Positions 5,151 through 42,395 of a DNA stretch of 42,395 nucleotides are shown one piece after another; position 1 is the first letter of the stretch; each line of letters begins with the position of its first letter. The DNA is taken from assembly GCF_006345805.1 (NCBI RefSeq), contig NW_021835102.1, positions 1 through 42,395 on the forward strand, given 5' to 3'. Made by a program: the position numbers and the translations under genes. This DNA comes from Octopus sinensis. Taxonomy: Eukaryota. The notes below the pieces were generated by a model. It had not been told where the DNA came from and made no database searches. It saw only the letters and a program-made list of their open reading frames with translations.

Positions 5151-6700
5151 GATAATGATAATAATGATAATGAAATTATTGTATACAGTGCTCAGGTGCA
5201 CCACAACTTGTCAAAAGTGCGTATAAAGCATATGCAGTAATGTACAAATGTCTGGAAAGTGAACATAGTATGAGTCAGATACATGCTTGCGTGTGTATGG
5301 AGGGGAGAAAATCAGGTGTAGCGTTGGCGAATCTCAGGAAGCATCGAAGTTATGAAGGATGCAGTGCTCCAACTAACAACTGATGCCGGCAGTTTGTTCC
5401 ATGCTTCAGCAACTCTTAGCGTGAAAAAGTGTTTCCGAAAGTCATGGGAGCTGTGCTGTTTTCTGACTTTGTAAACATGTCCACGGGTGTTAGACAGGTG
5501 GATTTTGAAAAGGTGCTCAGAGTTGTTGTTTGTAAGATGGTTAATAATTTTATGGGTGTCTGCCAAGTCAGTTGCCAGACGTTGGAGTTTCAATGTATCC
5601 ATGCCCAGGGAAGTAAGACGTTCAGAATATGGCAAATTCCTGACGGAGGGTATTCTCTTGGTTGCACGTCGCTGAACGATTTCCAGACGATTAATATCCT
5701 GGGCAAGATAGGGGTTCCAGACCGGTGATGCAAATTCCAGGTGAGGTCGCACCATAACTATATAAAGCCGTAGATAGATAGCCGGAGAGCGGCTCACAAA
5801 GGACTTGGCAATTTTAGCAATGTGTTTTGTCCAACTGTCGATGTGTTTTGTCCAAATCGCTGTCGACAATAATGCCCAGGTCACGTTCACAAGAAGACTT
5901 TTTGAGATTAGTGTTGTGGAGGGAGTAAGTAGACGCTGGGTTTTTCCTCTCAAAATGGTGGTGCATTTGTCAGCTTGAGTTGCCAGTCCATGATCCACTG
6001 CTGCATTGTGTCCAGGTCTGATTGCAATAAATATCTATAGTGTACAGGATCTGTCCTCTTTATTTCGAGGTACAGTTTGATGTCATCTGCATATTTCAGC
6101 ACTGTGGCATTCTTTAAGTTGGCATCTATGTCATTAACATATGCAACAAATAAAAGGGGGCCAATAACAGATCCCTGTGGTACACCAGATATCATCTCAT
6201 AGGGTGAAGAGTGCTGTTCTAGAAGTGAGACAACCTCTTTTCGGCCGATAATGAAGGACTTCAACCAGTTATAGAGATCATCTCTTACACCCATTGCAGA
6301 GAGTTTCACCATACGTATTTTGTGTGGCACAGAATTAAAAGCCTTAGCAAAGTCCAGGTAAACAACATCCACCCAGGATCCACGATCAGTGATTCGGGTA
6401 ATGTCCTGAAGAAACCCGATGAGTTGATTACAGCAGCTGGAGTTAGGAAGAAATCCAAATTGTGATGGCTGGATGAGGCTGTGAGACTTCTAGAAGTTCC
6501 AGAGGGTTTCTCTGACACAGGATTCCATCAGTTTGACGATGCAGCTAGTAAGACTAACGGGGCGATAGTTGACAGATGATGTGCGGTCACCTTTTTAGAA
6601 CAGAGGGATAACACTGGCAGTTTTCCACTGTTCTGGAGTAACACCATTGTCAAAACAGAATTGAAAGAATAGTGAATAGTGAAAGTTGGTTTAGAAGAAA
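5151..6700 (-). mobile_element. CR1/L2-group LINE, 5'-truncated, decayed reverse transcriptase ORF2
   Basis: WKTASVIPLF*KGDRTSSVNYRPVSLTSC; YLDFAKAFNSVPH; GVPQGSVIGPLLF; YADD; RPHLEFASPVWNP...VQRRATK; FFTLRVAEAWNKLP; (ATC/ATT) tail at ~5150. Confidence 0.92.
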
Positions 6701-10689: not shown

Positions 10690-10875
10690 AATTTGTTTCA
10701 GTCATTAGACTGTGGTCATGCTTGAGCACTGCCTAGAAGGATTTAATAAGCCTGGTACTTATTCTATCGTTTTCTTTTCGCCGAACCGCTAAGTTACGGG
10801 AACATAAATACACCAACTCAAGTTGCTAAGCAGTGGTGAGGGAGAAACCCAAACCCAAACACACACATGTGTGTG
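10690..10875 (-). mobile_element. SINE family B, 3' half
   Basis: TTTCAGTCATTAGACTGTGGTCATGC...TACTTATTCTATCG...GCCGAACCGCTAAGTTACGGG matches 33950-34080. Confidence 0.8.
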
Positions 10876-10885
10876 TATTATAAGA

Positions 10886-11243
10886 TATAATTATAAGGGC
10901 ACTGGAATGCCAGCGCCTATCCGCTAGAAGTAGATGTCAAATATCTACAATCCACTTTAAATTTGTTCTCTGTTTATAATCCCAGGTCGAATGCGAGGTA
11001 ATGAGCAAGATTTACAAAATTTCGGATAATCCCTATATCTTAAGATTTCATGCTCTGTAATAAAAATTACTTTGCAATCCTCAGTAGAGATATACCGACT
11101 AATATATAAGCGAAAAATACATACACATACCGATAAATCTACTCGTACAGATATTAATATATACATACATTGGATTGCAGGTATTTGACATCTACTTCTA
11201 GCGTATAGGCACTGGCATTCCAACGCCCTTATTCATAATTATA
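10886..11243 (-). mobile_element. Fold-back mini-element with hammerhead (PLE pseudo-LTR-like)
   Basis: About 70-bp inverted arms at 10886-10954 and 11171-11243; HHR in the spacer. Confidence 0.7.
11030..11090 (-). ncRNA. Type I hammerhead ribozyme
   Basis: Minus strand: TCTCTA-CTGAGGA-TTGC...GTAAT tttt ATTAC...GCAT-GAAA-TCTTAAGA-TA|TAGGGA. Stem I 6 bp; stem III is the palindrome ATCTTAAGAT; base of stem II non-canonical. Confidence 0.7.
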
Positions 11244-11385
11244 CTTTTATAATCATATACATAAAAATTAATTTTACCTATATGATCATTTTTTATACGG
11301 TAGCCACTGATAAAATCATCTTAATGATTATATCCTCAATTTATAATTATATACATACATACATACTTATATATATATATATATT

Positions 11386-11440
<55 letters not shown>

Positions 11441-11444
<4 letters not shown>

Positions 11445-11866
11445 CCAATTAAGGACTGAACACGAAAAGTGGACAGTCAACATGCTAGATATAGACGTCA
11501 AATCGCCATTCTCCACAAAAGATTATGTTCTCAAATCAAACTCATCACAAACCCAAGCAATAAACAAGTGAAAATATACGAAATACAATACTTATCCATG
11601 TACTGACCGTTTTTGCATCTAGTTCAGCAAATTGCATTTATAACGGGCCATGCTGACGAAGGCTACAGGTATCCTTGCGGATAATAATAGCCGAAACTGA
11701 TCAGTACATGGATAAGTATTGTATTTCGTATATTTTCACTTGTTTATTGCTTGGGTTTGTGATGAGTTTGATTTGAGAACATAATATTTTGTGGAGAATG
11801 GCGATTTGACGTCTATATCTAGCATGTTGACTGCCCACTTTTCGTGTTCAGTCCTTAATTGGTATA
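11441..11866 (+). mobile_element. Fold-back mini-element with intact hammerhead (PLE pseudo-LTR-like), recent
   Basis: 166-bp inverted arms at 11441-11606 and 11701-11866 with 2 mismatches seen; flanked by (TA)n. Confidence 0.85.
11648..11711 (+). ncRNA. Type I hammerhead ribozyme, intact core
   Basis: CCATG-CTGACGA-A-GGCTA...TATCC ttgc GGATA...TAGCC-GAAA-CTGATCAG-TA|CATGG. Stem I 5 bp, stem II 5+5 bp, stem III is the palindrome ACTGATCAGT; predicted cut after 11706 (GUA). Confidence 0.88.
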
Positions 11867-11944
11867 TATAAATATTTAATCTTCGGATTCTTTTTTTGAT
11901 ATGCTAGACCACTGGTTTTAATTGATAAATATTGATTTCTACCC

Positions 11945-11955
11945 TTAATTAATTT

Positions 11956-11995
<40 letters not shown>

Positions 11996-11996
11996 T

Positions 11997-12045
<49 letters not shown>
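11945..12045. repeat. (TA)n microsatellite (another at 11350-11442)
   Basis: Direct reading. Confidence 0.95.
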
Positions 12046-13273: not shown

Positions 13274-14678
13274 CATTTGCGCAGCTTCTAACGCTGCAAG
13301 AGTACTACGGTGTTAGCTCTTCACTACCACTGAACTAAGGTAACACCCCTTATTTTTTCAGCACCATCTGGAATATTCAAGCGGTCCCAAGCAATGCTGT
13401 AAGTGCTCCATCCTTATTGCAGCCCCTATCTGTTCCGTGTACTGCTCAAGACTTTTACTCAAGGTTCCCAGGGCTCCGACAATTATTAGTACTACTACCA
13501 CCTTTTTCAGCGACCACAACTGCTTAACCTCCTAAGCTAACCTATTATATCTATCAACCTTTCTTTCTTCCAAGCTAACCTATCATATCAATCGACTTTT
13601 CTTTCTTCCTTATCGCATACCATGTTGCCAGTTAGGCATGATATATCTATTATCTCACATAGTTTGCTTTCTTTCTCAGTTAACACTATGGTTTCCTATC
13701 ATCTATCTCCAGGTCGTACTGAATCATAAAATCCCATACGATCTTTGCATTATTATTTTCGAGGATGCCTTCGGGTTTATGTTCCTACCACGTTTTTGCT
13801 CTGTAAAGTCCTTATTTGTTGCAAAGTGTCCAATGGACAATCCTTGCTATGTTGTCATGACGTCTCGTATATTCTTTTGAGGCTAGTGGCGTACATTGCC
13901 TGGTAATATGCCATACGGTTTCACCATTTTGTCTACAAATTCTCCACTTATCACTTTCTGATGTGTTGTCTCTTCTGCATTTGATGTAATTGGTTCTTAA
14001 TGCTTGATTTTAGGCAGCACAGATTAGAGCCTCCGTTTCCGGATTTAAATCCTTTTTAATCATCCATAGCCATCTTTTTTCTTAGTCTGTCTTATTTTCA
14101 ACCTCCCTATGAAATTGTCTATGCATTCTTTTCTTTATCCACCTATTTTCAGTTTCATCCATTCTCAAAAGTTTGTACAGCGCTTTATCTTTGAAATCTT
14201 CAATCCTATACAAGCCTGACCTTCTTACTTCCAATAATAGCAATTCTGTGGCATTTTTACATGATGTGTTCGCATCCAATCAGTCCTCTTCTCTTTCTTT
14301 TTCTTTGTACATACAGTCTGTCTCTTTCAATATTGGGTGGAGTATCCCATATCGAGTCAGCAATTTCTTTGTCGTACTGTCTAAGATGTTTATTTCGTCT
14401 ACTGTCCATGCGATTACCCCTGCTCCATATCTAAGAAGTGAAACCGGCCAGGTGTTTATAGCTTGAATTTTATTCCCTCCGTTTAATTCCGACTTAATGA
14501 TCGGTCTCAGTCTGCACAAGAACTCCACCTTAAATTTTTCTGTCATTTCTTTTCCCATCAATTTATCCATTTCAAATATCCCCAAGTACATATAGCCCGT
14601 CTCTTCTATCTGCTTTATAACCTTGCCCGACGGTATCGCTAGCCCGTCCATATATTTGATTTTGCCTCTCTTCAAAAC
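13271..14678 (-). mobile_element. R4/Dong-like RLE LINE, 5'-truncated: RT thumb, CCHC knuckle, RLE and ~85-bp 3' UTR
   Basis: YLGI...RLRPIIKSELNGGNKIQAINTWPVSLLRYGAG...LTRYGILHP; WRICRQNGETVWHITRQC...RRHDN; IIVGALGTLSKSLE...CLGTA; (TAA)n on both sides. Confidence 0.92.
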
Positions 14679-23043: not shown

Positions 23044-23069
23044 ATATATATATATATCTATGCATATAT

Positions 23070-23365
23070 ATTTAATGTAGGATAAAATTTTGTCGAAAAA
23101 ATTTTAATCAATGGCCCGCATATTAAAAAATACCTTTAACGGTTAAAATTATAAACACCTTATAAATAAGGGCAAACGAAAAAATTTCTAATGCCAAATA
23201 TGCTGAAAGTTGGACATAATTGTCCATTAACCATATAATTTTTCACAATACACACGCTACTCGAAAAAAAGCCGACAGAAATTTCTAAAAAATTCCATTA
23301 TTACCATATCGAACCGATTTCAGGGTTAGTTCGTAAGAACCCTCCCTCGTCAGTGATAAATAGCC
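23070..23365 (-). mobile_element. PLE pseudo-LTR-like element: HHR plus AT-rich tail into (TA)n
   Basis: HHR at 23301-23359; bounded by (TA)n and (GATA)n arrays. Confidence 0.6.
23301..23359 (-). ncRNA. Type I hammerhead ribozyme
   Basis: TTATCA-CTGACGA-GGG-AGGGTT cttacgaact AACCCT-GAAA-TCGGTTCGA-TA|TGGTAA. Stem I 6 bp, stem II 6 bp, stem III ATCG/CGAT; 3-nt insert after A9. Confidence 0.75.
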
Positions 23366-27315: not shown

Positions 27316-28204
27316 TTAGGGCTGTCAGATAAATGTGGCATTTCTTGACCAAAAATTATTTGAACTATCTTTGTGTTTTATGATATTTTTTGGTAACACT
27401 ATTTTTCTTTTACATCTTTTGTTTACCTCTTTTTAGATTTATGATGATGGAGAACCAAATAAAAAGAAAATGAGCATTTTCGATGTCTGGTTCTCTTCAC
27501 TTTCAGTCAGGGTTCCAAAGCTGTCAAAGCCTCTCGAGATATTTCGTGCAGTGTACGAAGAAGTGGTTGTTACTGAGAGAATTGCACAGAAATGGTTTTC
27601 ACACTCCAAGGATGGGAGAGGAAATTCGACATCACAGATTCTCTGTGTTCCCGCAGATCTGATCAATTCTATGAGGGTCGATTGGACAAACTCAACCATG
27701 AAGATCTGCGCCAGTCTACTAGGGAATTGGCCCAGCAAGTGAGATGCGGTCACAACACCGTCGCGCGTTAGGTAAAGTCACTCGATAAGTAAAGTCCTAA
27801 TGACCCGAACGGCAACACAGAGTGCCTCTTCAATACCAGAACACTCGCTCCCACATCGATATTTTCACAAAAAAATACCATTTAGTTGCTTGGTTGGAAG
27901 TTCTACCGTACCCACTGTATTTTCTTGGTAGAATATCTTCAGATAATTATCTTTTTCGGTCGCTCTCCAGCATTCTGTAAGACGTTTCATTCAACAGAGA
28001 CATTGGGAAACTAGTTGACTGTTCGGAAGAAGTTGAACAATGTGGAGAATATACTATTGGCTGATCTTCTTTTATTTTTTTTTTTCTTTTACTTGTTTCA
28101 GCCATTTGATAGTGACCATGCATCACATTTGTTAAAATTGTTGATAAAAAATAAGGATTAAAATAAACGGAAAATTAAAACGAACGAATTTATCTAATCC
28201 ACTG
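27316..28204 (+). mobile_element. Mariner (DD34D-type) relic, internally deleted
   Basis: Decayed KENEHF...QGSKAVKASRDI, STRELAQ and LGWEVLPYP...SDNYLFRSL; weak TIR match CAGATAAAT / ATTTATCTA; SINE-B tail stub at ~28080-28125. Confidence 0.75.
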
Positions 28205-29278: not shown

Positions 29279-30345
29279 GATTTTGATTTTGATTTTGATT
29301 TTTCCAGTTTCAGCTAATGAGCTGTGGCCATGCTGGGGCACCGCCATTTGGTTTGCTACACGGTTTTACCTCACGGATGCTTTTTAGCAAACGCCATCTG
29401 ATGCATGAGAGAGTTCGATGCAGCTGCCCTCATCTGCACCTCCTGCCGTGAAGTTGGTTCATCCGGGACACCTGACAAGAAGAGATCCAGTTTTCATTTT
29501 AAAGACATCTGCATCCACCCCATGCAGGTCTCTTAGGTTCTTCGGAGGATATTGAAGAGCGTGGGCCTCTGAAGCCCAGGCTATCACAATATCTTGTCCT
29601 ACATCTTGATGGCAAATTGGAGTCCTTGGTACTACGCAGTGGCGTCCGGTTCTGGCATTTGGTGACTCTCGATGCCAAAGTCTGGACAAGACCTTCCAGG
29701 ATCTTCCAGATATATATTATGGCATATTTTTCGCCTACCTCCAGGGAATAGAGCTTTAATCTCCTGAGTCTCTCCAGTAGCTCATATGCTGCACAGAGGC
29801 TATCTTCTTCTTCGGGTAGCTTCGTTGGATCGCCTCAAGTTCTGTGATCAACTTGACACTGGATGTGGACCATAGCTGAGAGCAATAGTCAAAGTGGCTT
29901 AGGACAAGTGTCTTCCAGAGGACCATCATGGTTTCTTGTTCTCTTGTTCTAAAGGTTCTAAGAATCCATCCAGCCACCGTCTACATTTCATTGTCAGTTT
30001 AGCAACATGTACATGAAAGGTCCGTCATCACTCATGTGAATACCCAGGTCACGCACTGATTGTGCCTCTGGGATTGCAATCCCTCCAGGTCCAGTGTATT
30101 CATTGGGTATTGCATTCAGTTTGCATGCTGATAGTATAAGCTTGAAACTTTTCAGCATGAACTGCATGTTATTCTTTTCAGCCCACTTGTATATTTCGTC
30201 CAGCTCACATTGCAGGTGCTTAGTGTCTTCAGGGTTCTGTATTCCTGTGAAACTTTTGTATCATCTGCATAACTTGTGATCGTGGCTCTCTGCGTGGCTG
30301 AGGGCATGTCTGAGAGGGCCATTATGAATAGTAGTGGTCCCAAAA
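29279..30345 (-). mobile_element. CR1/L2-group LINE, 5'-truncated, with (AAAATC)n tail
   Basis: [13 protein letters not shown]...SYADDTK; GWILRTFRTREQETMMVLWKTLVLSHFDYCSQLWS...LEAIQRS; 3' end GCCCCAGCATGGCCACAGCTC...CTGAAAC. Confidence 0.92.
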
Positions 30346-30346
30346 C

Positions 30347-30395
<49 letters not shown>

Positions 30396-30453
30396 TTTTT
30401 GGGACCACTACTATGTCTGAGAGGGCCATAGAATAGTAGTGGTCCCCAGAAAC

Positions 30454-30467
30454 ATATATATATTATG

Positions 30468-30498
<31 letters not shown>

Positions 30499-30572
30499 TA
30501 TATATAGATATATATATATATATATTATATAATATATATAATGTATATAATATATATGCATATATATATATG

Positions 30573-30652
<80 letters not shown>

Positions 30653-31009
30653 GTATATATATATATATAATAAAATATATTATAGATATATATACATATA
30701 TATATATAATATATTATATATATACATATAATATATATCATATATATATATATTAGCATATATAGAATATAATTATATATATATATAACATATATAATAT
30801 ATAATATTACATATATATAGATATATACATATATAATATATACATATATATATACATATATATTATACTACTATATATATTACATAGATATATAAATATA
30901 TACATGTATATCTATAATATATACATATATATATATTATATATACATATATATCTTATATATACATATATATATACATATATATATATATATGTGTGTGT
31001 ATATATATG

Positions 31010-31042
<33 letters not shown>

Positions 31043-31055
31043 GTATATATATATG

Positions 31056-31087
<32 letters not shown>

Positions 31088-31301
31088 GTATATATATATA
31101 TATATATAATATTATATATATATATATATTAATATATGTTATATATATATATATATATATATATAATGTATAGATATATATATATATGTATATATATATA
31201 TATGTGTATATATATATATATGTATATTTACATATATATATGTATATATATATAATATGTATATATATATATATGTAATATTATATATATATATGTATAT
31301 G

Positions 31302-31340
<39 letters not shown>

Positions 31341-31460
31341 CCCATATATACATATATATATATTATATATATATACATATATATATATGATATATATATA
31401 CACATATATATATATATATATACATATATATATTATATACATATATATAATATACTATTA

Positions 31461-31517
<57 letters not shown>

Positions 31518-31558
31518 CTATACATATATATATATATATATATAGATATATATATATA

Positions 31559-31589
<31 letters not shown>

Positions 31590-31786
31590 TCTATATATAT
31601 ATATACATATATATATATTATACATATATATATATATACATATATATATATACATATATATATATATACATATATATATAATATATATATAATACTACAC
31701 AAATATATATATATAATATATATATCTATAACCATATATACATATAGTTATAATACATATCTATATATATACATATATATATATAC

Positions 31787-31821
<35 letters not shown>

Positions 31822-31889
31822 CTATATACTATATATACATATATAATATATATATATATATATATCCATATATATATACATATATATAA
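30454..31889. repeat. About 1.4-kb degenerate (TA)n array
   Basis: Direct reading; source of all I/Y ORFs at 30463-31958. Confidence 0.97.
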
Positions 31890-31890
31890 T

Positions 31891-32013
31891 TTTTTGATTT
31901 TGATTTTGATTTTTCCAGTTTCAGCTAATGAGCTGTGGCCATGCTGGGGCACCGCCATTTGGTTTGCTACACGATTTTACCTCACGGATGCTTTTTAGCA
32001 AACGCCATCTGAT
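31891..32013 (-). repeat. Near-identical duplicate of the LINE 3' end at 29281-29403
   Basis: 123 bp with one substitution seen (CACGG vs CACGA). Confidence 0.9.
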
Positions 32014-35512: not shown

Positions 35513-36008
35513 ATATATATATATATATATATAAATATATATATATATAAATATATATTACTTTTGAATATTTTTTGTTAGCTGTTCATTCTTCGTGAAA
35601 AGTTGTAGCTGGGTATATTTGTGTGCAGCATCGATACATTTAAATTCCGGAATGACACGATCTTGCAACAGATTATGAAACGCTCAAATTCATTTCTTTT
35701 CCCCATCTCGTTCATTATACCTTTCTCGCGAGATAACCCCGCCTCTGTATTATTATCCTTTTGTACTAACCTACGTTGAGAAGACGAGCAGCTATCTGTG
35801 GTCTTACGTATCTCTTGCTACCTTTTATCAATTGCTTGTTTCAACCATTAGACTGCGGCCATGCTACAGCACTACTTTGAAGAATTTTTACTCGAACTGA
35901 CTGACCTCGCTCCCACCCTAGTACACTTTTTAAAAACCTAATACTTATTCAACCGTCGTTCATTGCCAACCCGTTAAGTTACGGGGACGTAAACACACCA
36001 AAACCGGT

Positions 36009-36176
36009 CTTTTTTTAAGAGATGAGGAATTATGTACATTATTTACATTATTTACATTTGACTCCATAATTCACTCCATAATTGCCCACGGGCATATGGT
36101 GTAGTGTTTAAGAGCGCGAGCTACTAGCCCCTAGATTCCGAGTTCGATTCCAAGTACTGGCCTGAACAACAACAAC

Positions 36177-36208
<32 letters not shown>

Positions 36209-36359
36209 CATTGAAAAATACCTTGGGAATGAGAACCCAGGTTAGAAATTTCCCCAAGACACATGAAGAAGGCTGGAGGGTATATCAGCCGAAACGTTGT
36301 GTTAACAACAAACAAGATGAGGACAAACATCCATCGAATGTAAATAATGTAAATAAAGT
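36009..36359 (+). mobile_element. tRNA-headed SINE with hammerhead-bearing PLE-type tail and inverted 5' tail copy (family C)
   Basis: 14-bp TSD ACACCAAAACCGGT (35995-36008, 36360-36373); A-box 36097-36107 and B-box GAGTTCGATTCC 36140-36151; internal (AAT)n; HHR 36258-36303; 20-bp perfect inverted repeat 36039-36058 / 36337-36356. Confidence 0.85.
36258..36303 (+). ncRNA. Minimal type I hammerhead ribozyme, C3 mutated to A
   Basis: GACAC-ATGAAGA-A-GGCTG gagggtatat CAGCC-GAAAC-GT-T|GTGTT; stem III reduced to the palindrome AACGTT. Confidence 0.78.
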
Positions 36360-36617
36360 ACACCAAAACCGGTTTGTCAAACGGAGTGGGGTACACTCAT
36401 GCACACATAATTTTGCTTTCAAATTTTTTTTGTTTTTTTTTTAATTATATCTGTTTTGTTGCTATAAAAATTTATTGTTTCAATGTCGTCTGCTTCTGCT
36501 TGTATTTTATAGTTTTCTAGTGTCCAGAGAAGCGTATTTGTTTTTTGTTTTATTTTCCCCCATTTCTTTATTACATTTTATGGTGATTTTATTGCAACCA
36601 TATGAATAAATATATAA

Positions 36618-36827
36618 TGTTTGTGTGTCTGTTTGTCTCCCCAACATTACTTGACAACCGATGCTGGCGTGTTTACGTTCCCATAACTTAGCGGTTCGGC
36701 AAAAGAAACCGATAGAATAAGTACAAGGCTTCCAAGGAATAAGTCCTGAGTTCGATTTGCTCGACTAAAGGCGGTGCTCCAGCATGGCCGCAGTCAAATG
36801 ACTGACACAAGTAAAAGAGTAAAAGAG
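36618..36827 (+). mobile_element. SINE family B 3' half
   Basis: Matches the reverse complement of 33926-34130; tail (AAAAGAGT)2. Confidence 0.9.
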
Positions 36828-37688
36828 TAAGTATGCGGATTGTTGTCATAGTAGCGACGCTAAAGCACGCAGAGCGAAACCGCTCGGCAAAGACTTACCT
36901 TGGACTCTGCTGTGCATCAGCACTAAGTTCTGTTGTAGCTCACTTCCGTTGTTTACAGCAGTGCTTTGAAGTAACGTGGTCGTCGCATTGAACATGACAA
37001 AGTTGTCATGGTGATACCTGCTCAGAGGCCTACGTAAAGTTGCAGAAAGTGTATGGAGAGGAGTGTATGAGCCGCACACTAGTGTACGAGTGGTTCAGAC
37101 GTTTCCAATATGGCCGTAAATATGCTGATATTGACGAACGTTCTGGGGGACCGGCAATCAGTAGAACTTAGAAAAACATTGCAGATGTGCGTGGAGCTGT
37201 GAGGGGAAATCGTCGAATCATCATCCATGAGTTATCAGAGGATGTGCAGATTAGTTTCGGTTCAGTTCAGTCTATTATCACTGAAGATTTGGGTATGAGA
37301 CGCGTGTCTGCTAAGTTTGTGCCAAAACTGCTTTCAGCTGACCAAAAGGACACTCGAGTTTCAGTTGCACAAGATCTCCTTGATTGTGTCGAGAACGATG
37401 AAAACTTTTTGAAAACTCTGCGTAGGCCTGTGAGCAGGTATCGCCAATCTTTTGGCAAAATTTGATGTAGATTCTCTGCTCATTTTTCTGTCATGGTCAA
37501 TGCGACAATCACACGCTACACACCTTCTTTCCAAGCACTGCTGTAAACAGCAGAAGTGAGCTAGAACGTTAAAACTTGGTGCGCATGCATAGCAAAGTTC
37601 AAGGTGAATCTGTGCCGAGCGGCTATATTCTACGCGCTCTAGCTTCGTTATTATGGCAACAGTCCGAATATTTATTGATCAGATCACA
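36828..37688 (+). mobile_element. Non-autonomous mariner derivative: N-terminal HTH region between long inverted arms
   Basis: VRGNRRIIIHELSEDVQISFGSVQSIITEDLGMRRVSAKFVPKLL; arms 36828-37041 and 37413-37688; terminal TA at 37689. Confidence 0.85.
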
Positions 37689-39972: not shown

Positions 39973-40013
<41 letters not shown>

Positions 40014-40088
40014 GTCTCTCTTTTTCGATCTCCCTCTTTCTGTTTAATTCCATATATACACTCATATGTGTGTGTGCGTGTGTGTGTA

Positions 40089-40159
<71 letters not shown>

Positions 40160-40342
40160 TAGTGACAGAGAGAGAGAGCGGAGAGAGACAGTCATATATA
40201 TGTATATACACACGCATTATGTATATTTGTGTGCGTGTCTGTTAGTTCGCCAGATGTTTTTGCGACCTTTCGTCAGGCACATTTAGTGTTGTACGCATGG
40301 GTCCTTGTGGCTAATAAAATCATTAGTATTATAATTATTATA

Positions 40343-40375
<33 letters not shown>

Positions 40376-41088
40376 GATGTGTTTGTCGTTGTTGTTGTTG
40401 TCCTTATAGTTTGTAGCTGTTGTTGCTACTGTTTGTGTTATTTGTCTCGGACTTCGTATTTTTGGTTTTTCTTTCGTTTTATACATATAAATATATATAT
40501 ATATATGCATGTATGTTTGTATGTATGTATGTATGTATGTATGTTTGCTTAGTAGATCCCTTGTTTTGTTTAGCTTGTTGGCTTACTTTGTTTGGTATTC
40601 TTTCCGTCTATTGCGGTGATTTAGCATCTTTACTCTCTCTCTCTCTCTCTCTCTCTAACTCTCACTCTCCCGCTATCTCTCCATCTCTCTCTCCCTCTCT
40701 CTATCAATCTATCTTTTTTTCTCCCTCCCACTGTCTCTCCTTCTCTGCAAACTTATGATAACTATCAGTCTGACACGATGCCTTAAGTTCAAAAGTGTTT
40801 CGTTTGCTCTTTTGGCGACATATAAATCTATCTTTACTGATGCTAGCAATGATCAAATGGGCAAATATATCGATTCAAATTACTTAACTTTACGTTTCAT
40901 TTGACTCCCCTCCATCCACCTGACACCCGTTTCTTTCTTCTTTTCCTTCATCTCTTCCTATCGTCGTCTTCAACTGTTTTCTCTTGTTTACTTTTTTCTG
41001 CCATTTTTTAAATAATTCTTTGCGTTTGATTGTTTCATAAATCCATTCAGTACAATACATAAACACACCCAAACATACGCATACATAC

Positions 41089-41148
<60 letters not shown>

Positions 41149-41189
41149 ACGTATACATATACAAACGTACGTACACATGTATATGTATG

Positions 41190-41259
<70 letters not shown>

Positions 41260-41513
41260 TATGTGTATTTATTTATATGGCTGCTTGTCTGTTGTCTCTA
41301 TGTGTTTATATAATTTCTTTGATTACAGTTTAAACAGACATCTATTTACATACATATATGCACACATACATAAACATACTCTGGTACTATATGCGTGTGT
41401 GTATATGTATGCCTGCGCGCGTGTGTGTGTCTGTGTGTGTGAAAGAGTAAAAGGGAAACAAAAAGACAGCATGTGTGTGCGCGTGTTGCACTTTGGGGGG
41501 GTCATTTTACCTA

Positions 41514-41551
<38 letters not shown>

Positions 41552-41743
41552 TACATATATATGCATATATATATGTATGTATTTACACATACACACACAC
41601 ACATATATATATATACAATATACACATATATGTATATTAAGTATACAACTATATATATAACTATATATACAACTATATATATATAATTTATATTAAATTA
41701 TATATATATACATATATATGTATATATATATAGATAGATAGAT

Positions 41744-41801
<58 letters not shown>

Positions 41802-41821
41802 CAAGATCTACATACACACAT

Positions 41822-41869
<48 letters not shown>

Positions 41870-41976
41870 CCGACAATATTCGCATATACATATATATATA
41901 TGAATATATATGTGCATACATATATACGTGTAAACATACATACATGCATACATGCATGCATACATACATACATACA

Positions 41977-42010
<34 letters not shown>
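39960..42010. repeat. Dense compound microsatellite block: (CT)n, (TA)n, (TTA)n, (TATG)n, (GATA)n, (CATA)n
   Basis: Direct reading, interspersed with short unique stretches. Confidence 0.9.
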
Positions 42011-42012
<2 letters not shown>

Positions 42013-42395
42013 TACATACGCACTATCGCGTACGCCTTGTACACCGCGTACTCACACTGTTCTTTATTATTCCTGGACATGGGTGTAGGTTCTGTATCTG
42101 CTATATCTATATATTCATGTAGCCTCTCTTTGATTAAGGTTTAAACAAACATCTAAAAGATATTAGCTGGTCATTATTTTCCTTCCCTTTTAGTTGTCGT
42201 CGACACTGGTACTGTTTTTTCTTGTTATTTTCTTTATTTTGTTCCTGGTTTTTTTTTTTGGTTTTTTCTGTGATTTCCCCCCCCCCTCTGTTTGTTTTTT
42301 TGTTTTTGTGTTTTGTGTTTTTGTTTTGTGTTTTTTTTTTTTTTCCCTTTTCGTTTGTTTCTGAATTTTTCTTTATTTTTTTGTGCAGTTCTTTG

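What the first reader, a model, noticed from the sequence alone, without database searches (positions are those of the whole stretch)
11441..11866. Young fold-back element with an intact hammerhead in the loop
Seen: 166-bp arms differing at only 2 positions, and every canonical core nucleotide present with a GUA site. The inverted arm begins exactly at the centre of the stem III palindrome (ACTGA|TCAGT, 11700/11701). Inference: the inversion arose by fold-back priming at or near the ribozyme site, linking self-cleavage to integration, and the copy is recent and probably catalytically competent.
Basis: partly seen in the sequence, partly recalled or inferred. Interest (0 to 1): 0.9.

Follow-up and report, generated by a model that had tools for sequence, protein, structure and literature searches.

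The report
Penelope-type hammerhead retroelement with inverted partial copy
A young, roughly 510-base insertion in an octopus (TA)n microsatellite carries an intact hammerhead ribozyme motif of the minimal kind known from Penelope-like retrotransposons, joined head-to-head to an inverted partial copy of itself; this layout is already known for those elements, so the find is a good new example and not a new mechanism.

Summary
Arms 11441-11606 and 11701-11866 differ at two positions. The spacer carries a complete hammerhead core with a GUA site. Perfect arm identity stops at the centre of the ACTGA|TCAGT palindrome.

The motif has one extra A between A9 and G10.1, a G10.1-C11.1 pair, a 5-bp helix I, an enlarged helix II and a palindromic helix III. 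These are the published hallmarks of minimal hammerheads from Penelope-like elements (PLEs). Rfam's hammerhead models do not detect it.

The window is octopus DNA and holds three more motifs of this architecture, with compensatory changes. One belongs to a homologous, older element 400 bp away. That element has the same layout, but its inverted copy ends about 80 nt from its ribozyme site. A third element has a 29-nt inverted copy.

So the inversion breakpoints vary. In E the inverted arm also runs 6 nt past the predicted cleavage site. Fold-back priming at the ribozyme is therefore not supported.

The best reading is a non-autonomous PLE-type unit with the inverted 5'-truncated copy typical of PLE insertions, in their typical (TA)n target. 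Cleavage as a monomer or within the fold-back RNA is unlikely, because such ribozymes work as dimers. No PLE gene or further family copy could be retrieved.

The parts
11348..11444 (.). Left (TA)~50 microsatellite flank, the presumed target.
   Evidence: TRF; sequence.
11441..11606 (-). Left arm R': an inverted, 5'-truncated copy of the unit's 3' part. Its sense strand is the minus strand. Its inner end is TACTGA, the complement of TCAGTA.
   Evidence: 166 nt, 2 mismatches at 11473 and 11521, I1.
11607..11647 (+). Leader of the forward unit, the 5' part of the 94-nt spacer. It is unique sequence, not a decayed palindrome.
11648..11711 (+). Minimal type-I hammerhead. Helix I 11648-52 with 11707-11; core CUGACGA 11653-59; unpaired A 11660; helix II 11661-92; GAAA 11693-96; helix III palindrome ACUGAUCAGU 11696-705; predicted cleavage at 11706/11707.
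   Evidence: Direct reading; descriptor scan; dimer cofold; model search and pair counts.
11701..11866 (+). Right arm R: the 3' part of the forward unit. It holds the box ATTTGACGTCTATATCTAGC at 11804-11823 that is shared with neighbour N.
11867..11955 (+). Unique 89-nt stretch between the right arm and the right (TA)n. It could be a PLE 'tail' or the 3' end of the unit, or part of the target.
   Evidence: no significant similarity to R or N.
11956..12043 (.). Right (TA)~45 microsatellite flank.
   Evidence: TRF.
10889..11232 (-). Neighbour element N, an older homologue with the same layout on the minus strand: inverted partial copy 11232->11166, spacer 11165->11090, degenerate hammerhead 11089->11031, R 11035->10889.
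   Evidence: I4, arms 88% complementary; 13.7 bits, E=0.13; R_E versus R_N: 63% identity, z=4.6, 0 of 1000 shuffles.
23302..23358 (-). H3: a third hammerhead of the same architecture. The core is complete, with G.U at 10.1-11.1. It heads a unit of about 300 nt lying between (TCTA)n and (TA)n.
   Evidence: (19.5 bits, E=0.0025).
36259..36302 (+). H4: a fourth, loop-less minimal hammerhead (GAAA-CG-UU) that lacks C3. It lies between 29-nt inverted arms 36033-61 and 36334-62.
   Evidence: (18.8 bits, E=0.004).

Best explanation
The feature is an insertion of about 510 bp in a (TA)n microsatellite of an octopus genome. It is made of a short non-autonomous retroelement unit of about 260 nt: a 41-nt leader, a 64-nt minimal hammerhead and a 155-160-nt 3' region R. 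This unit is joined head-to-head to a second, inverted copy that contains only R plus 6 nt.

The hammerhead is the 'minimal' type carried by Penelope-like elements (PLEs). The layout is the one described for PLE insertions: an inverted 5'-truncated copy at the 5' side, both copies sharing the same outer 3' end, and a microsatellite target.

Inferred mechanism. A PLE reverse transcriptase/endonuclease supplied in trans cut both strands of the AT-rich target. It primed cDNA synthesis from both 3' ends on the same site of the element RNA. One cDNA ran to the RNA 5' end and the other stopped early. The two were then joined at 11606/11607.

The ribozyme is a passenger or processing motif of the element RNA that works, if at all, as a dimer through its 10-bp palindromic helix III. 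It did not create the inversion.

Shown here: the anatomy, the hammerhead class features, homologous elements with different breakpoints, and the energetics.
Inferred: trans-mobilisation by a PLE, two-strand priming, and weak activity of this copy.
For: Host: the LINE reverse-transcriptase ORF in the window has its best hits in Octopus sinensis and O. vulgaris. Window repeats are 85-94% identical to an O. vulgaris locus. PLEs are annotated in O. vulgaris (PMC13282606).

Hammerhead class. [quoted passage not shown] All are present at 11648-11711. The RNAcofold minimum-energy dimer is the double hammerhead with a 10-bp intermolecular helix III, at -50.4 against 2 x -21.5 kcal/mol.

Family. A model built from E alone finds three more motifs in the window (E = 0.0025, 0.004, 0.13) and nothing below E = 0.5 in 41 kb of other octopus DNA. 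On the four aligned motifs, 60 of 60 cells pair and 13 of 18 pairs show changes on both sides. Slid controls pair at 29-39%.

Architecture. N is homologous to E over the whole of R (63% identity, z = 4.6). The hammerhead-to-box distance is similar, 97 against 93 nt. N's inverted copy is only about 66-70 nt. H4 has 29-nt inverted arms.

Target. (TA)~50 and (TA)~45 flank the insert.

Literature. PMC8557442 describes the inverted 5'-truncated copy, the tail and the (TA)n bias. PMC11167929 shows that a PLE protein cleaves and extends both target strands, and that hammerhead mutants do not affect insertion.
Against: No PLE reverse-transcriptase or GIY-YIG ORF lies in the window. No autonomous partner with this hammerhead or R was retrieved, so the PLE link rests on motif class and insertion architecture.

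No further copy of the E family could be found outside the window.

There is no partial tandem (pLTR) arrangement here.

Perfect identity ends exactly at the palindrome centre. The prior for that is about 1/260 for that exact base, or a few percent for any hammerhead landmark, and the model leaves it as coincidence.

E-N homology is weak outside the box and the hammerhead. The leaders are not significantly similar.

The pair counts were made on an alignment fitted to the model.
Confidence: 0.6

Rival explanations
1. One reading: the inversion arose by snap-back or template switching at the helix III palindrome, at or near the ribozyme site. On this view the hammerhead (its cleavage or its palindrome) is mechanistically tied to integration.
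For: Perfect arm identity ends exactly at ACTGA|TCAGT, 11700/11701. The palindrome forms a stable 10-bp intermolecular duplex. Identical cDNAs could also anneal there. The exact coincidence has a low prior probability.
Against: Snap-back at the palindrome predicts arms that meet at it, not a 94-nt one-sided spacer.

The arm includes 6 nt upstream of the cleavage site, so a self-cleaved RNA end was not the template end.

N and H4 have inverted copies ending about 80 and 32 nt away from their hammerheads.

Inverted copies also occur in PLE clades without hammerheads (PMC8557442). Hammerhead-dead PLE RNA inserts normally in vitro (PMC11167929).
Confidence: 0.12
2. A fold-back or MITE-type DNA transposon with long terminal inverted repeats, moved by a transposase with TA or AT-rich target preference. 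Its internal region happens to contain a captured hammerhead unit.
For: Long inverted arms, small size, no coding capacity and TA-rich flanks. E and N share a subterminal 20-nt box at similar offsets in all four arms, which could be a transposase-binding site. Tc1/mariner fragments lie in the window.
Against: The inner roughly 90 nt of E's arms are homologous to sequence that is single-copy in N. Arm extent is therefore not a conserved terminal repeat but a variable duplication.

The unit is polar (leader, hammerhead, R) with the hammerhead at a fixed distance from the 3' end in both elements.

No target-site duplication can be read in (TA)n.

To my knowledge no DNA transposon family carrying hammerheads is known (own knowledge, not tested here).
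Confidence: 0.12
3. The inverted arm is secondary: either a post-insertion inverted duplication (replication template switch or repair) or an assembly artefact at a hairpin-prone, microsatellite-flanked site.
For: The arms are nearly identical. Such structures are known to trouble assemblies (PMC8557442).
Against: Two mismatches between the arms, an asymmetric unique spacer and unique flanks on both sides do not fit a chimeric-read palindrome. The same layout recurs in N, with 12% arm divergence, and in H4.
Confidence: 0.06

Closest known systems
Minimal hammerhead ribozymes of metazoan Penelope-like elements (Cervera & de la Pena 2014, PMC4209133)
   Same: Type I topology. An unpaired nucleotide between A9 and G10.1. 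A G10.1-C11.1 pair. A 5-bp helix I. An enlarged helix II. A short palindromic helix III that predicts a dimeric active form. Occurrence as scattered single motifs, sometimes near inverted partners.
   Different: Helix II here is unusually long: 5 bp, a 4x4 internal loop, 5 bp and a tetraloop. No PLE ORF or pLTR context was found. I found no paper describing hammerheads in cephalopods in the paper library.
Insertion architecture of Penelope-like elements (Evgen'ev & Arkhipova 2005; Craig et al. 2021, PMC8557442; PAc in vitro system, PMC11167929)
   Same: An inverted 5'-truncated copy abutting the 5' end, both copies sharing the same 3' end, a (TA)n/AT-rich target with no readable target duplication, and a possible one-sided extension.
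   Different: The element is a unit of about 260 nt with no ORF and no partial tandem. The one-sided stretch is 89 nt rather than 30-40 nt.
Metazoan non-LTR retrozymes (Cervera & de la Pena 2020, PMC7229834; proposed PLE derivatives in bioRxiv 10.64898/2026.07.22.740005)
   Same: A small (170-400 nt), AT-rich, non-coding unit with one type I hammerhead. Likely dependent on a PLE in trans.
   Different: Retrozymes are tandem arrays with canonical hammerheads and make circular RNAs. Here there is a single unit plus an inverted partial copy, and the hammerhead is the minimal PLE type.
L1 5'-inversions by twin priming (own knowledge: Ostertag & Kazazian 2001)
   Same: An inverted segment created during target-primed reverse transcription from the second nicked strand.
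   Different: Twin priming inverts a different, more 5' part of one RNA. Here both arms are the same 3' part, implying two cDNAs started at the same RNA site.

Membership tests
Hammerhead ribozyme (type I) | Conserved core C3 U4 G5 A6 N7 G8 A9 / G12 A13 A14 / A15.1-U16.1 / H17 | tested here: met
   All positions are present at 11653-59, 11693-96 and 11705-06, with one extra A at 11660.
Hammerhead ribozyme (type I) | Three helices around the core, with helix I open | tested here: met
   Helix I 5 bp, helix II 5+5 bp, helix III 3 bp as a monomer or 10 bp as a dimer. Compensatory changes across four motifs.
Hammerhead ribozyme (type I) | Match to the curated Rfam hammerhead covariance models | tested here: not met
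   No hammerhead hit at gathering score or at E<=10, even in a 111-nt search. The same holds for H3 and H4.
Hammerhead ribozyme (type I) | Site-specific self-cleavage | not testable with these tools
   Needs in vitro transcription of monomer, dimer and fold-back constructs.
PLE-type minimal hammerhead | [quoted passage not shown] | tested here: met
   A11660. The other three motifs can be aligned with A, G or U at that column. For H3 this is ambiguous.
PLE-type minimal hammerhead | G10.1-C11.1 pair; helix I of 4-5 bp; enlarged helix II | tested here: met
   G11661-C11692; CCAUG/CAUGG; 10 bp of helix II in two blocks.
PLE-type minimal hammerhead | Palindromic 15.2-16.2/loop 3, allowing a dimeric helix III | tested here: met
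   ACUGAUCAGU. The cofold minimum-energy structure is the double hammerhead. N has UCUUAAGA and H4 has CG.
PLE-type minimal hammerhead | Lies in the pLTR of an element encoding a PLE reverse transcriptase with GIY-YIG endonuclease | tested here: not met
   No such ORF in the 42-kb window. The source genome could not be searched.
PLE insertion architecture | Inverted 5'-truncated copy adjacent to the 5' end, sharing the 3' end | tested here: met
   E 166 nt, N about 66-70 nt, H4 29 nt.
PLE insertion architecture | Microsatellite/AT-rich target | tested here: met
   (TA)~50 and (TA)~45 flank the insert. The 3' end of H3 abuts (TA)n.
PLE insertion architecture | Partial tandem forming pseudo-LTRs | tested here: not met
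   No direct repeat of any part of E.
PLE insertion architecture | One-sided 30-40-bp tail | tested here: inconclusive
   An 89-nt unique stretch lies on one side only, at 11867-11955. Its origin is unknown.
Non-LTR retrozyme | Tandem repeats, each with a canonical type I hammerhead | tested here: not met
   A single forward unit with no tandem copy. The hammerhead is of the minimal type.
MITE / fold-back DNA transposon | Conserved terminal inverted repeats with a fixed target-site duplication | tested here: inconclusive
   Inverted arms are present, but their extent differs between the homologous E and N. Any target duplication is unreadable in (TA)n.
MIR1435 microRNA precursor (Rfam RF03926) | Score at or above the family gathering threshold | tested here: not met
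   69.3 bits against a threshold of 94. The match follows the long hairpin, and MIR1435 is a plant miRNA family (own knowledge).

The most novel reading that the evidence does not exclude
The palindromic helix III of PLE minimal hammerheads is a preferred joining point for the inverted copy. Two routes are conceivable. The element RNA may often end in loop 3, so the polymerase jumps templates there. Alternatively, two identical cDNAs may anneal through the palindrome. Either way the hammerhead would have a structural role in building the unexplained inverted architecture of PLE insertions. In addition, the resulting 166-bp hairpin RNA could feed small-RNA or ADAR pathways in cephalopods.
Probability: 0.1. 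Interest if true: 0.65.

Novelty: new member of a known kind. Interest (0 to 1): 0.3.

Why it matters
The window shows that octopus genomes carry PLE-type minimal hammerheads that curated RNA models miss, four of them in 42 kb. I found no paper describing cephalopod hammerheads.

It also gives a clean, young example in which the two copies of a PLE-style head-to-head insertion can be read base by base: same outer ends, different inner ends.

That is useful raw material for the still unresolved PLE integration mechanism. It is also a caution for repeat annotation, since such insertions look like MITEs or microRNA hairpins. It does not reveal a new kind of element or a link between self-cleavage and integration.

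Tried and rejected
Rfam:
- The whole window at gathering score gave no hit.
- Three local E-value searches around E, H3 and H4 gave no hammerhead hit.
- The only notable match was a sub-threshold MIR1435 hit that follows the long hairpin. I rejected it.

Other copies of E:
- blastn and nhmmer within the window found only the two arms and a weak hit to N.
- Exact look-up of 10 ORFs in and around E found none in the protein collection.
- A protein search with the 45-aa arm ORF gave no candidate.
- DNA pattern scans of metagenome and viral contigs found nothing. A looser pattern gave 5 hits, which look like chance matches without helices I and II.
- Two octopus loci fetched through LINE proteins (41 kb) held no copy and no model hit below E = 0.5. 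That second result served as a negative control.

A PLE gene nearby:
- Pfam on 10 ORFs found only a LINE RVT_1 domain and a weak Mos1 HTH.
- Inspecting stop-to-stop frames over 7-17 kb showed nothing PLE-like.

Ideas rejected:
- The spacer is a decayed continuation of the palindrome.
- The 89-nt right-hand stretch is a third copy of R or is related to N.
- The leaders of E and N are homologous (not significant).
- H3 or H4 share their 3' regions with E (not significant).
- H4 has a tRNA-like head (no ARAGORN or Rfam support).

Supplements of the key papers were not held as text, and one paper (PMC522041) was not held at all.

Full report
**1. What is in the sequence.**

Positions 11441-11606 and 11701-11866 are reverse complements over 166 nt, with two mismatches at 11473 and 11521. 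The repeat finder reports 185-nt arms at 96%. That figure comes from running outwards into self-complementary (TA)n and inwards over 7 poorly matching bases. As RNA the element folds as one long hairpin, -303.5 kcal/mol, z = -39.

The element lies between (TA)~50 at 11348-11444 and (TA)~45 at 11956-12043. An 89-nt unique stretch (11867-11955) separates the right arm from the right microsatellite.

**2. The hammerhead.**

Read directly from the sequence, the spacer and the first bases of the right arm give these parts:
- Helix I: CCAUG 11648-52 with CAUGG 11707-11.
- Core: CUGACGA 11653-59.
- An extra A at 11660.
- Helix II: GGCUA/UAGCC, a 4x4 internal loop, UAUCC/GGAUA and a UUGC loop.
- GAAA at 11693-96.
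- The palindrome CUGAUCAG.
- U16.1 and A17, so the site is GUA|C at 11706/11707.

A relaxed descriptor scan finds this site and no other in the window. The chance rate is 0.003 hits per window (1 hit in 300 Markov-1 random windows).

Rfam's hammerhead models do not report it at any threshold tried. The literature explains why. Cervera and de la Pena (PMC4209133) describe 'minimal' hammerheads in metazoan Penelope-like elements. [quoted passage not shown] All of these features are present here.

The same paper reports no detectable cleavage for single motifs, and only weak cleavage for dimers or for constructs with an extended helix III. Consistent with this, the minimum-energy cofold of two 81-nt copies is the double hammerhead with a 10-bp intermolecular helix III, at -50.4 against 2 x -21.5 kcal/mol. 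In the complete fold-back RNA, enforcing the hammerhead costs about 21 kcal/mol.

**3. Where the window comes from.**

A LINE reverse-transcriptase ORF at 5312-5998(-) has its best hits in Octopus sinensis and O. vulgaris. Window repeats are 85-94% identical to an O. vulgaris locus. PLEs are annotated in O. vulgaris (PMC13282606).

**4. Relatives inside the window.**

A covariance model built from this one hammerhead was run over the window without filters. It finds three further motifs:
- 23302-23358(-), called H3 here: 19.5 bits, E = 0.0025.
- 36259-36302(+), called H4: 18.8 bits, E = 0.004.
- 11031-11089(-), in neighbour N: 13.7 bits, E = 0.13.

The same search over 41 kb of other octopus DNA gives nothing below E = 0.5.

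On the four aligned motifs, every one of 60 cells forms a standard pair, and 13 of 18 pairs show changes on both sides. Partners slid by 1-3 columns pair in only 29-39% of cells. The alignment is fitted to the model, so these counts lean towards the structure.

Only the studied copy has the full core together with G10.1-C11.1. H3 has G.U at that pair, H4 lacks C3, and N has lost the pair.

**5. The neighbour N decides the interpretation.**

N occupies 10889-11232 and was first seen as a second inverted repeat (I4; arms 88% complementary). Read on the minus strand, it has the same order of parts as the studied element (E) has on the plus strand:
- an inverted partial copy (11232->11166);
- a spacer;
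- a hammerhead (11089->11031);
- a 3' region R (11035->10889).

R of E and R of N align over their whole length at 63% identity (z = 4.6; 0 of 1000 shuffles; better than any of 86 control segments). They share a 20-nt box that occurs only in the four arms. The box lies 97 nt (E) and 93 nt (N) from the cleavage site.

N's inverted copy covers only the last 66-70 nt of R, so it ends about 80 nt 3' of the ribozyme site. The inner half of E's arms is therefore homologous to sequence that is single-copy in N.

H4 likewise sits between 29-nt inverted arms (36033-61 and 36334-62). The right arm starts 32 nt 3' of the hammerhead. H3 has no inverted copy and lies between (TCTA)n and (TA)n.

So the inverted copy recurs, but its length is variable.

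**6. What it is.**

This anatomy is what the PLE literature describes. Insertions are often preceded by an inverted 5'-truncated copy. Hammerheads lie in the terminal repeats. Some clades insert into (TA)n, so no target duplication can be read. An extension may be present at one end only (PMC8557442).

In vitro, a PLE protein cleaves and extends both strands of an AT-rich target and starts reverse transcription at a defined internal RNA site. Hammerhead-dead RNAs insert normally (PMC11167929).

I therefore read the locus as a non-autonomous PLE-type unit of about 260 nt, inserted with a second cDNA that started at the same RNA site on the other strand and stopped earlier. Trans-mobilisation and two-strand priming are inferences. 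No PLE ORF is in the window, and no autonomous partner could be fetched.

**7.

Three points from this locus argue against it:
- Snap-back at the palindrome would put the palindrome at the centre of symmetry. In fact it lies at one edge of a 94-nt spacer that shows no trace of former symmetry.
- The inverted arm contains the 6 nt upstream of the cleavage site, so a self-cleaved RNA was not its template end.
- The two other elements with inverted copies have breakpoints elsewhere.

The exact coincidence with the palindrome centre remains unexplained. I treat it as chance (about 1/260 for that base, a few percent for any hammerhead landmark). I keep a palindrome-assisted joining step as the novel case, at about 10%.

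**8. Age.**

Two differences in 166 nt give a Jukes-Cantor distance of 0.012. The calibration quoted for octopus TEs is a distance to consensus of 0.09 at about 25 My (PMC13282606). This corresponds to roughly 1-2 My, with wide Poisson error and assuming no gene conversion. N, at 12% arm divergence, would be roughly ten times older.

**9. Limits.**

No copy of the family outside the window could be retrieved. The breakpoint argument therefore rests on three elements. The PLE assignment rests on motif class and architecture rather than on a shared sequence with an autonomous element. Read support for the assembly could not be checked.

Noticed in passing
window 10889-11232 (minus strand): A second, older inverted-repeat element right next to the finding. 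It is homologous to the finding over its 3' region and carries a degenerate hammerhead with a different helix III palindrome (UCUUAAGA).
   Followed up: yes
window 23060-23365 (minus strand): A unit of about 300 nt that starts with a near-complete hammerhead (23358->23302; G.U at 10.1-11.1; 4-bp helix III with a 3-nt loop). It lies between (TCTA)n/(TCTG)n and (TA)n arrays. Its 3' region is unrelated to E.
   Followed up: partly
window 35995-36373: A loop-less minimal hammerhead (36259-36302, lacking C3) inside 29-nt inverted arms. The whole is bracketed by a 14-nt direct repeat, ACACCAAAACCGGT (35995-36008 and 36360-36373), which may be a target duplication inside a SINE copy. The stretch 36085-36160 looked tRNA-like by eye, but neither ARAGORN nor Rfam supports that.
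   Followed up: partly
L007 12990-13027 (minus strand), O. vulgaris: A weak model hit (10.8 bits, E=0.93) with the loop-less minimal hammerhead layout (GAAA-CG-UU) but U at position 6. It may be a decayed motif of the H4 type in another octopus genome.
   Followed up: no
window 35965-36008, 36657-36700, about 10760-10810: Copies of a short repeat (GCCAACCCGTTAAGTTACGGGGACGTAAACACACC...), probably an abundant octopus SINE. Two of them lie in inverted orientation around the H4 region.
   Followed up: no
window 5312-6372 (-), 14280-14675 (-): Frameshifted LINE reverse-transcriptase remnants (RVT_1, jockey-like). Best hits are Octopus sinensis and O. vulgaris proteins.
   Followed up: partly
window 27470-27742 (+), 37187-37465 (+): Short ORFs resembling the N-terminal HTH of Mos1/mariner transposases. 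The first has only a weak Pfam HTH_48 hit; the second had no Pfam hit and is judged by eye.
   Followed up: no
window 30000-32000, 40000-42395 and many other places: Very dense microsatellites ((TA)n, (TATC)n, (TGTC)n, (AAT)n, (CA)n). GC content falls to 0.165 in 30-32 kb. Most long 'ORFs' in the window are translations of these repeats.
   Followed up: no
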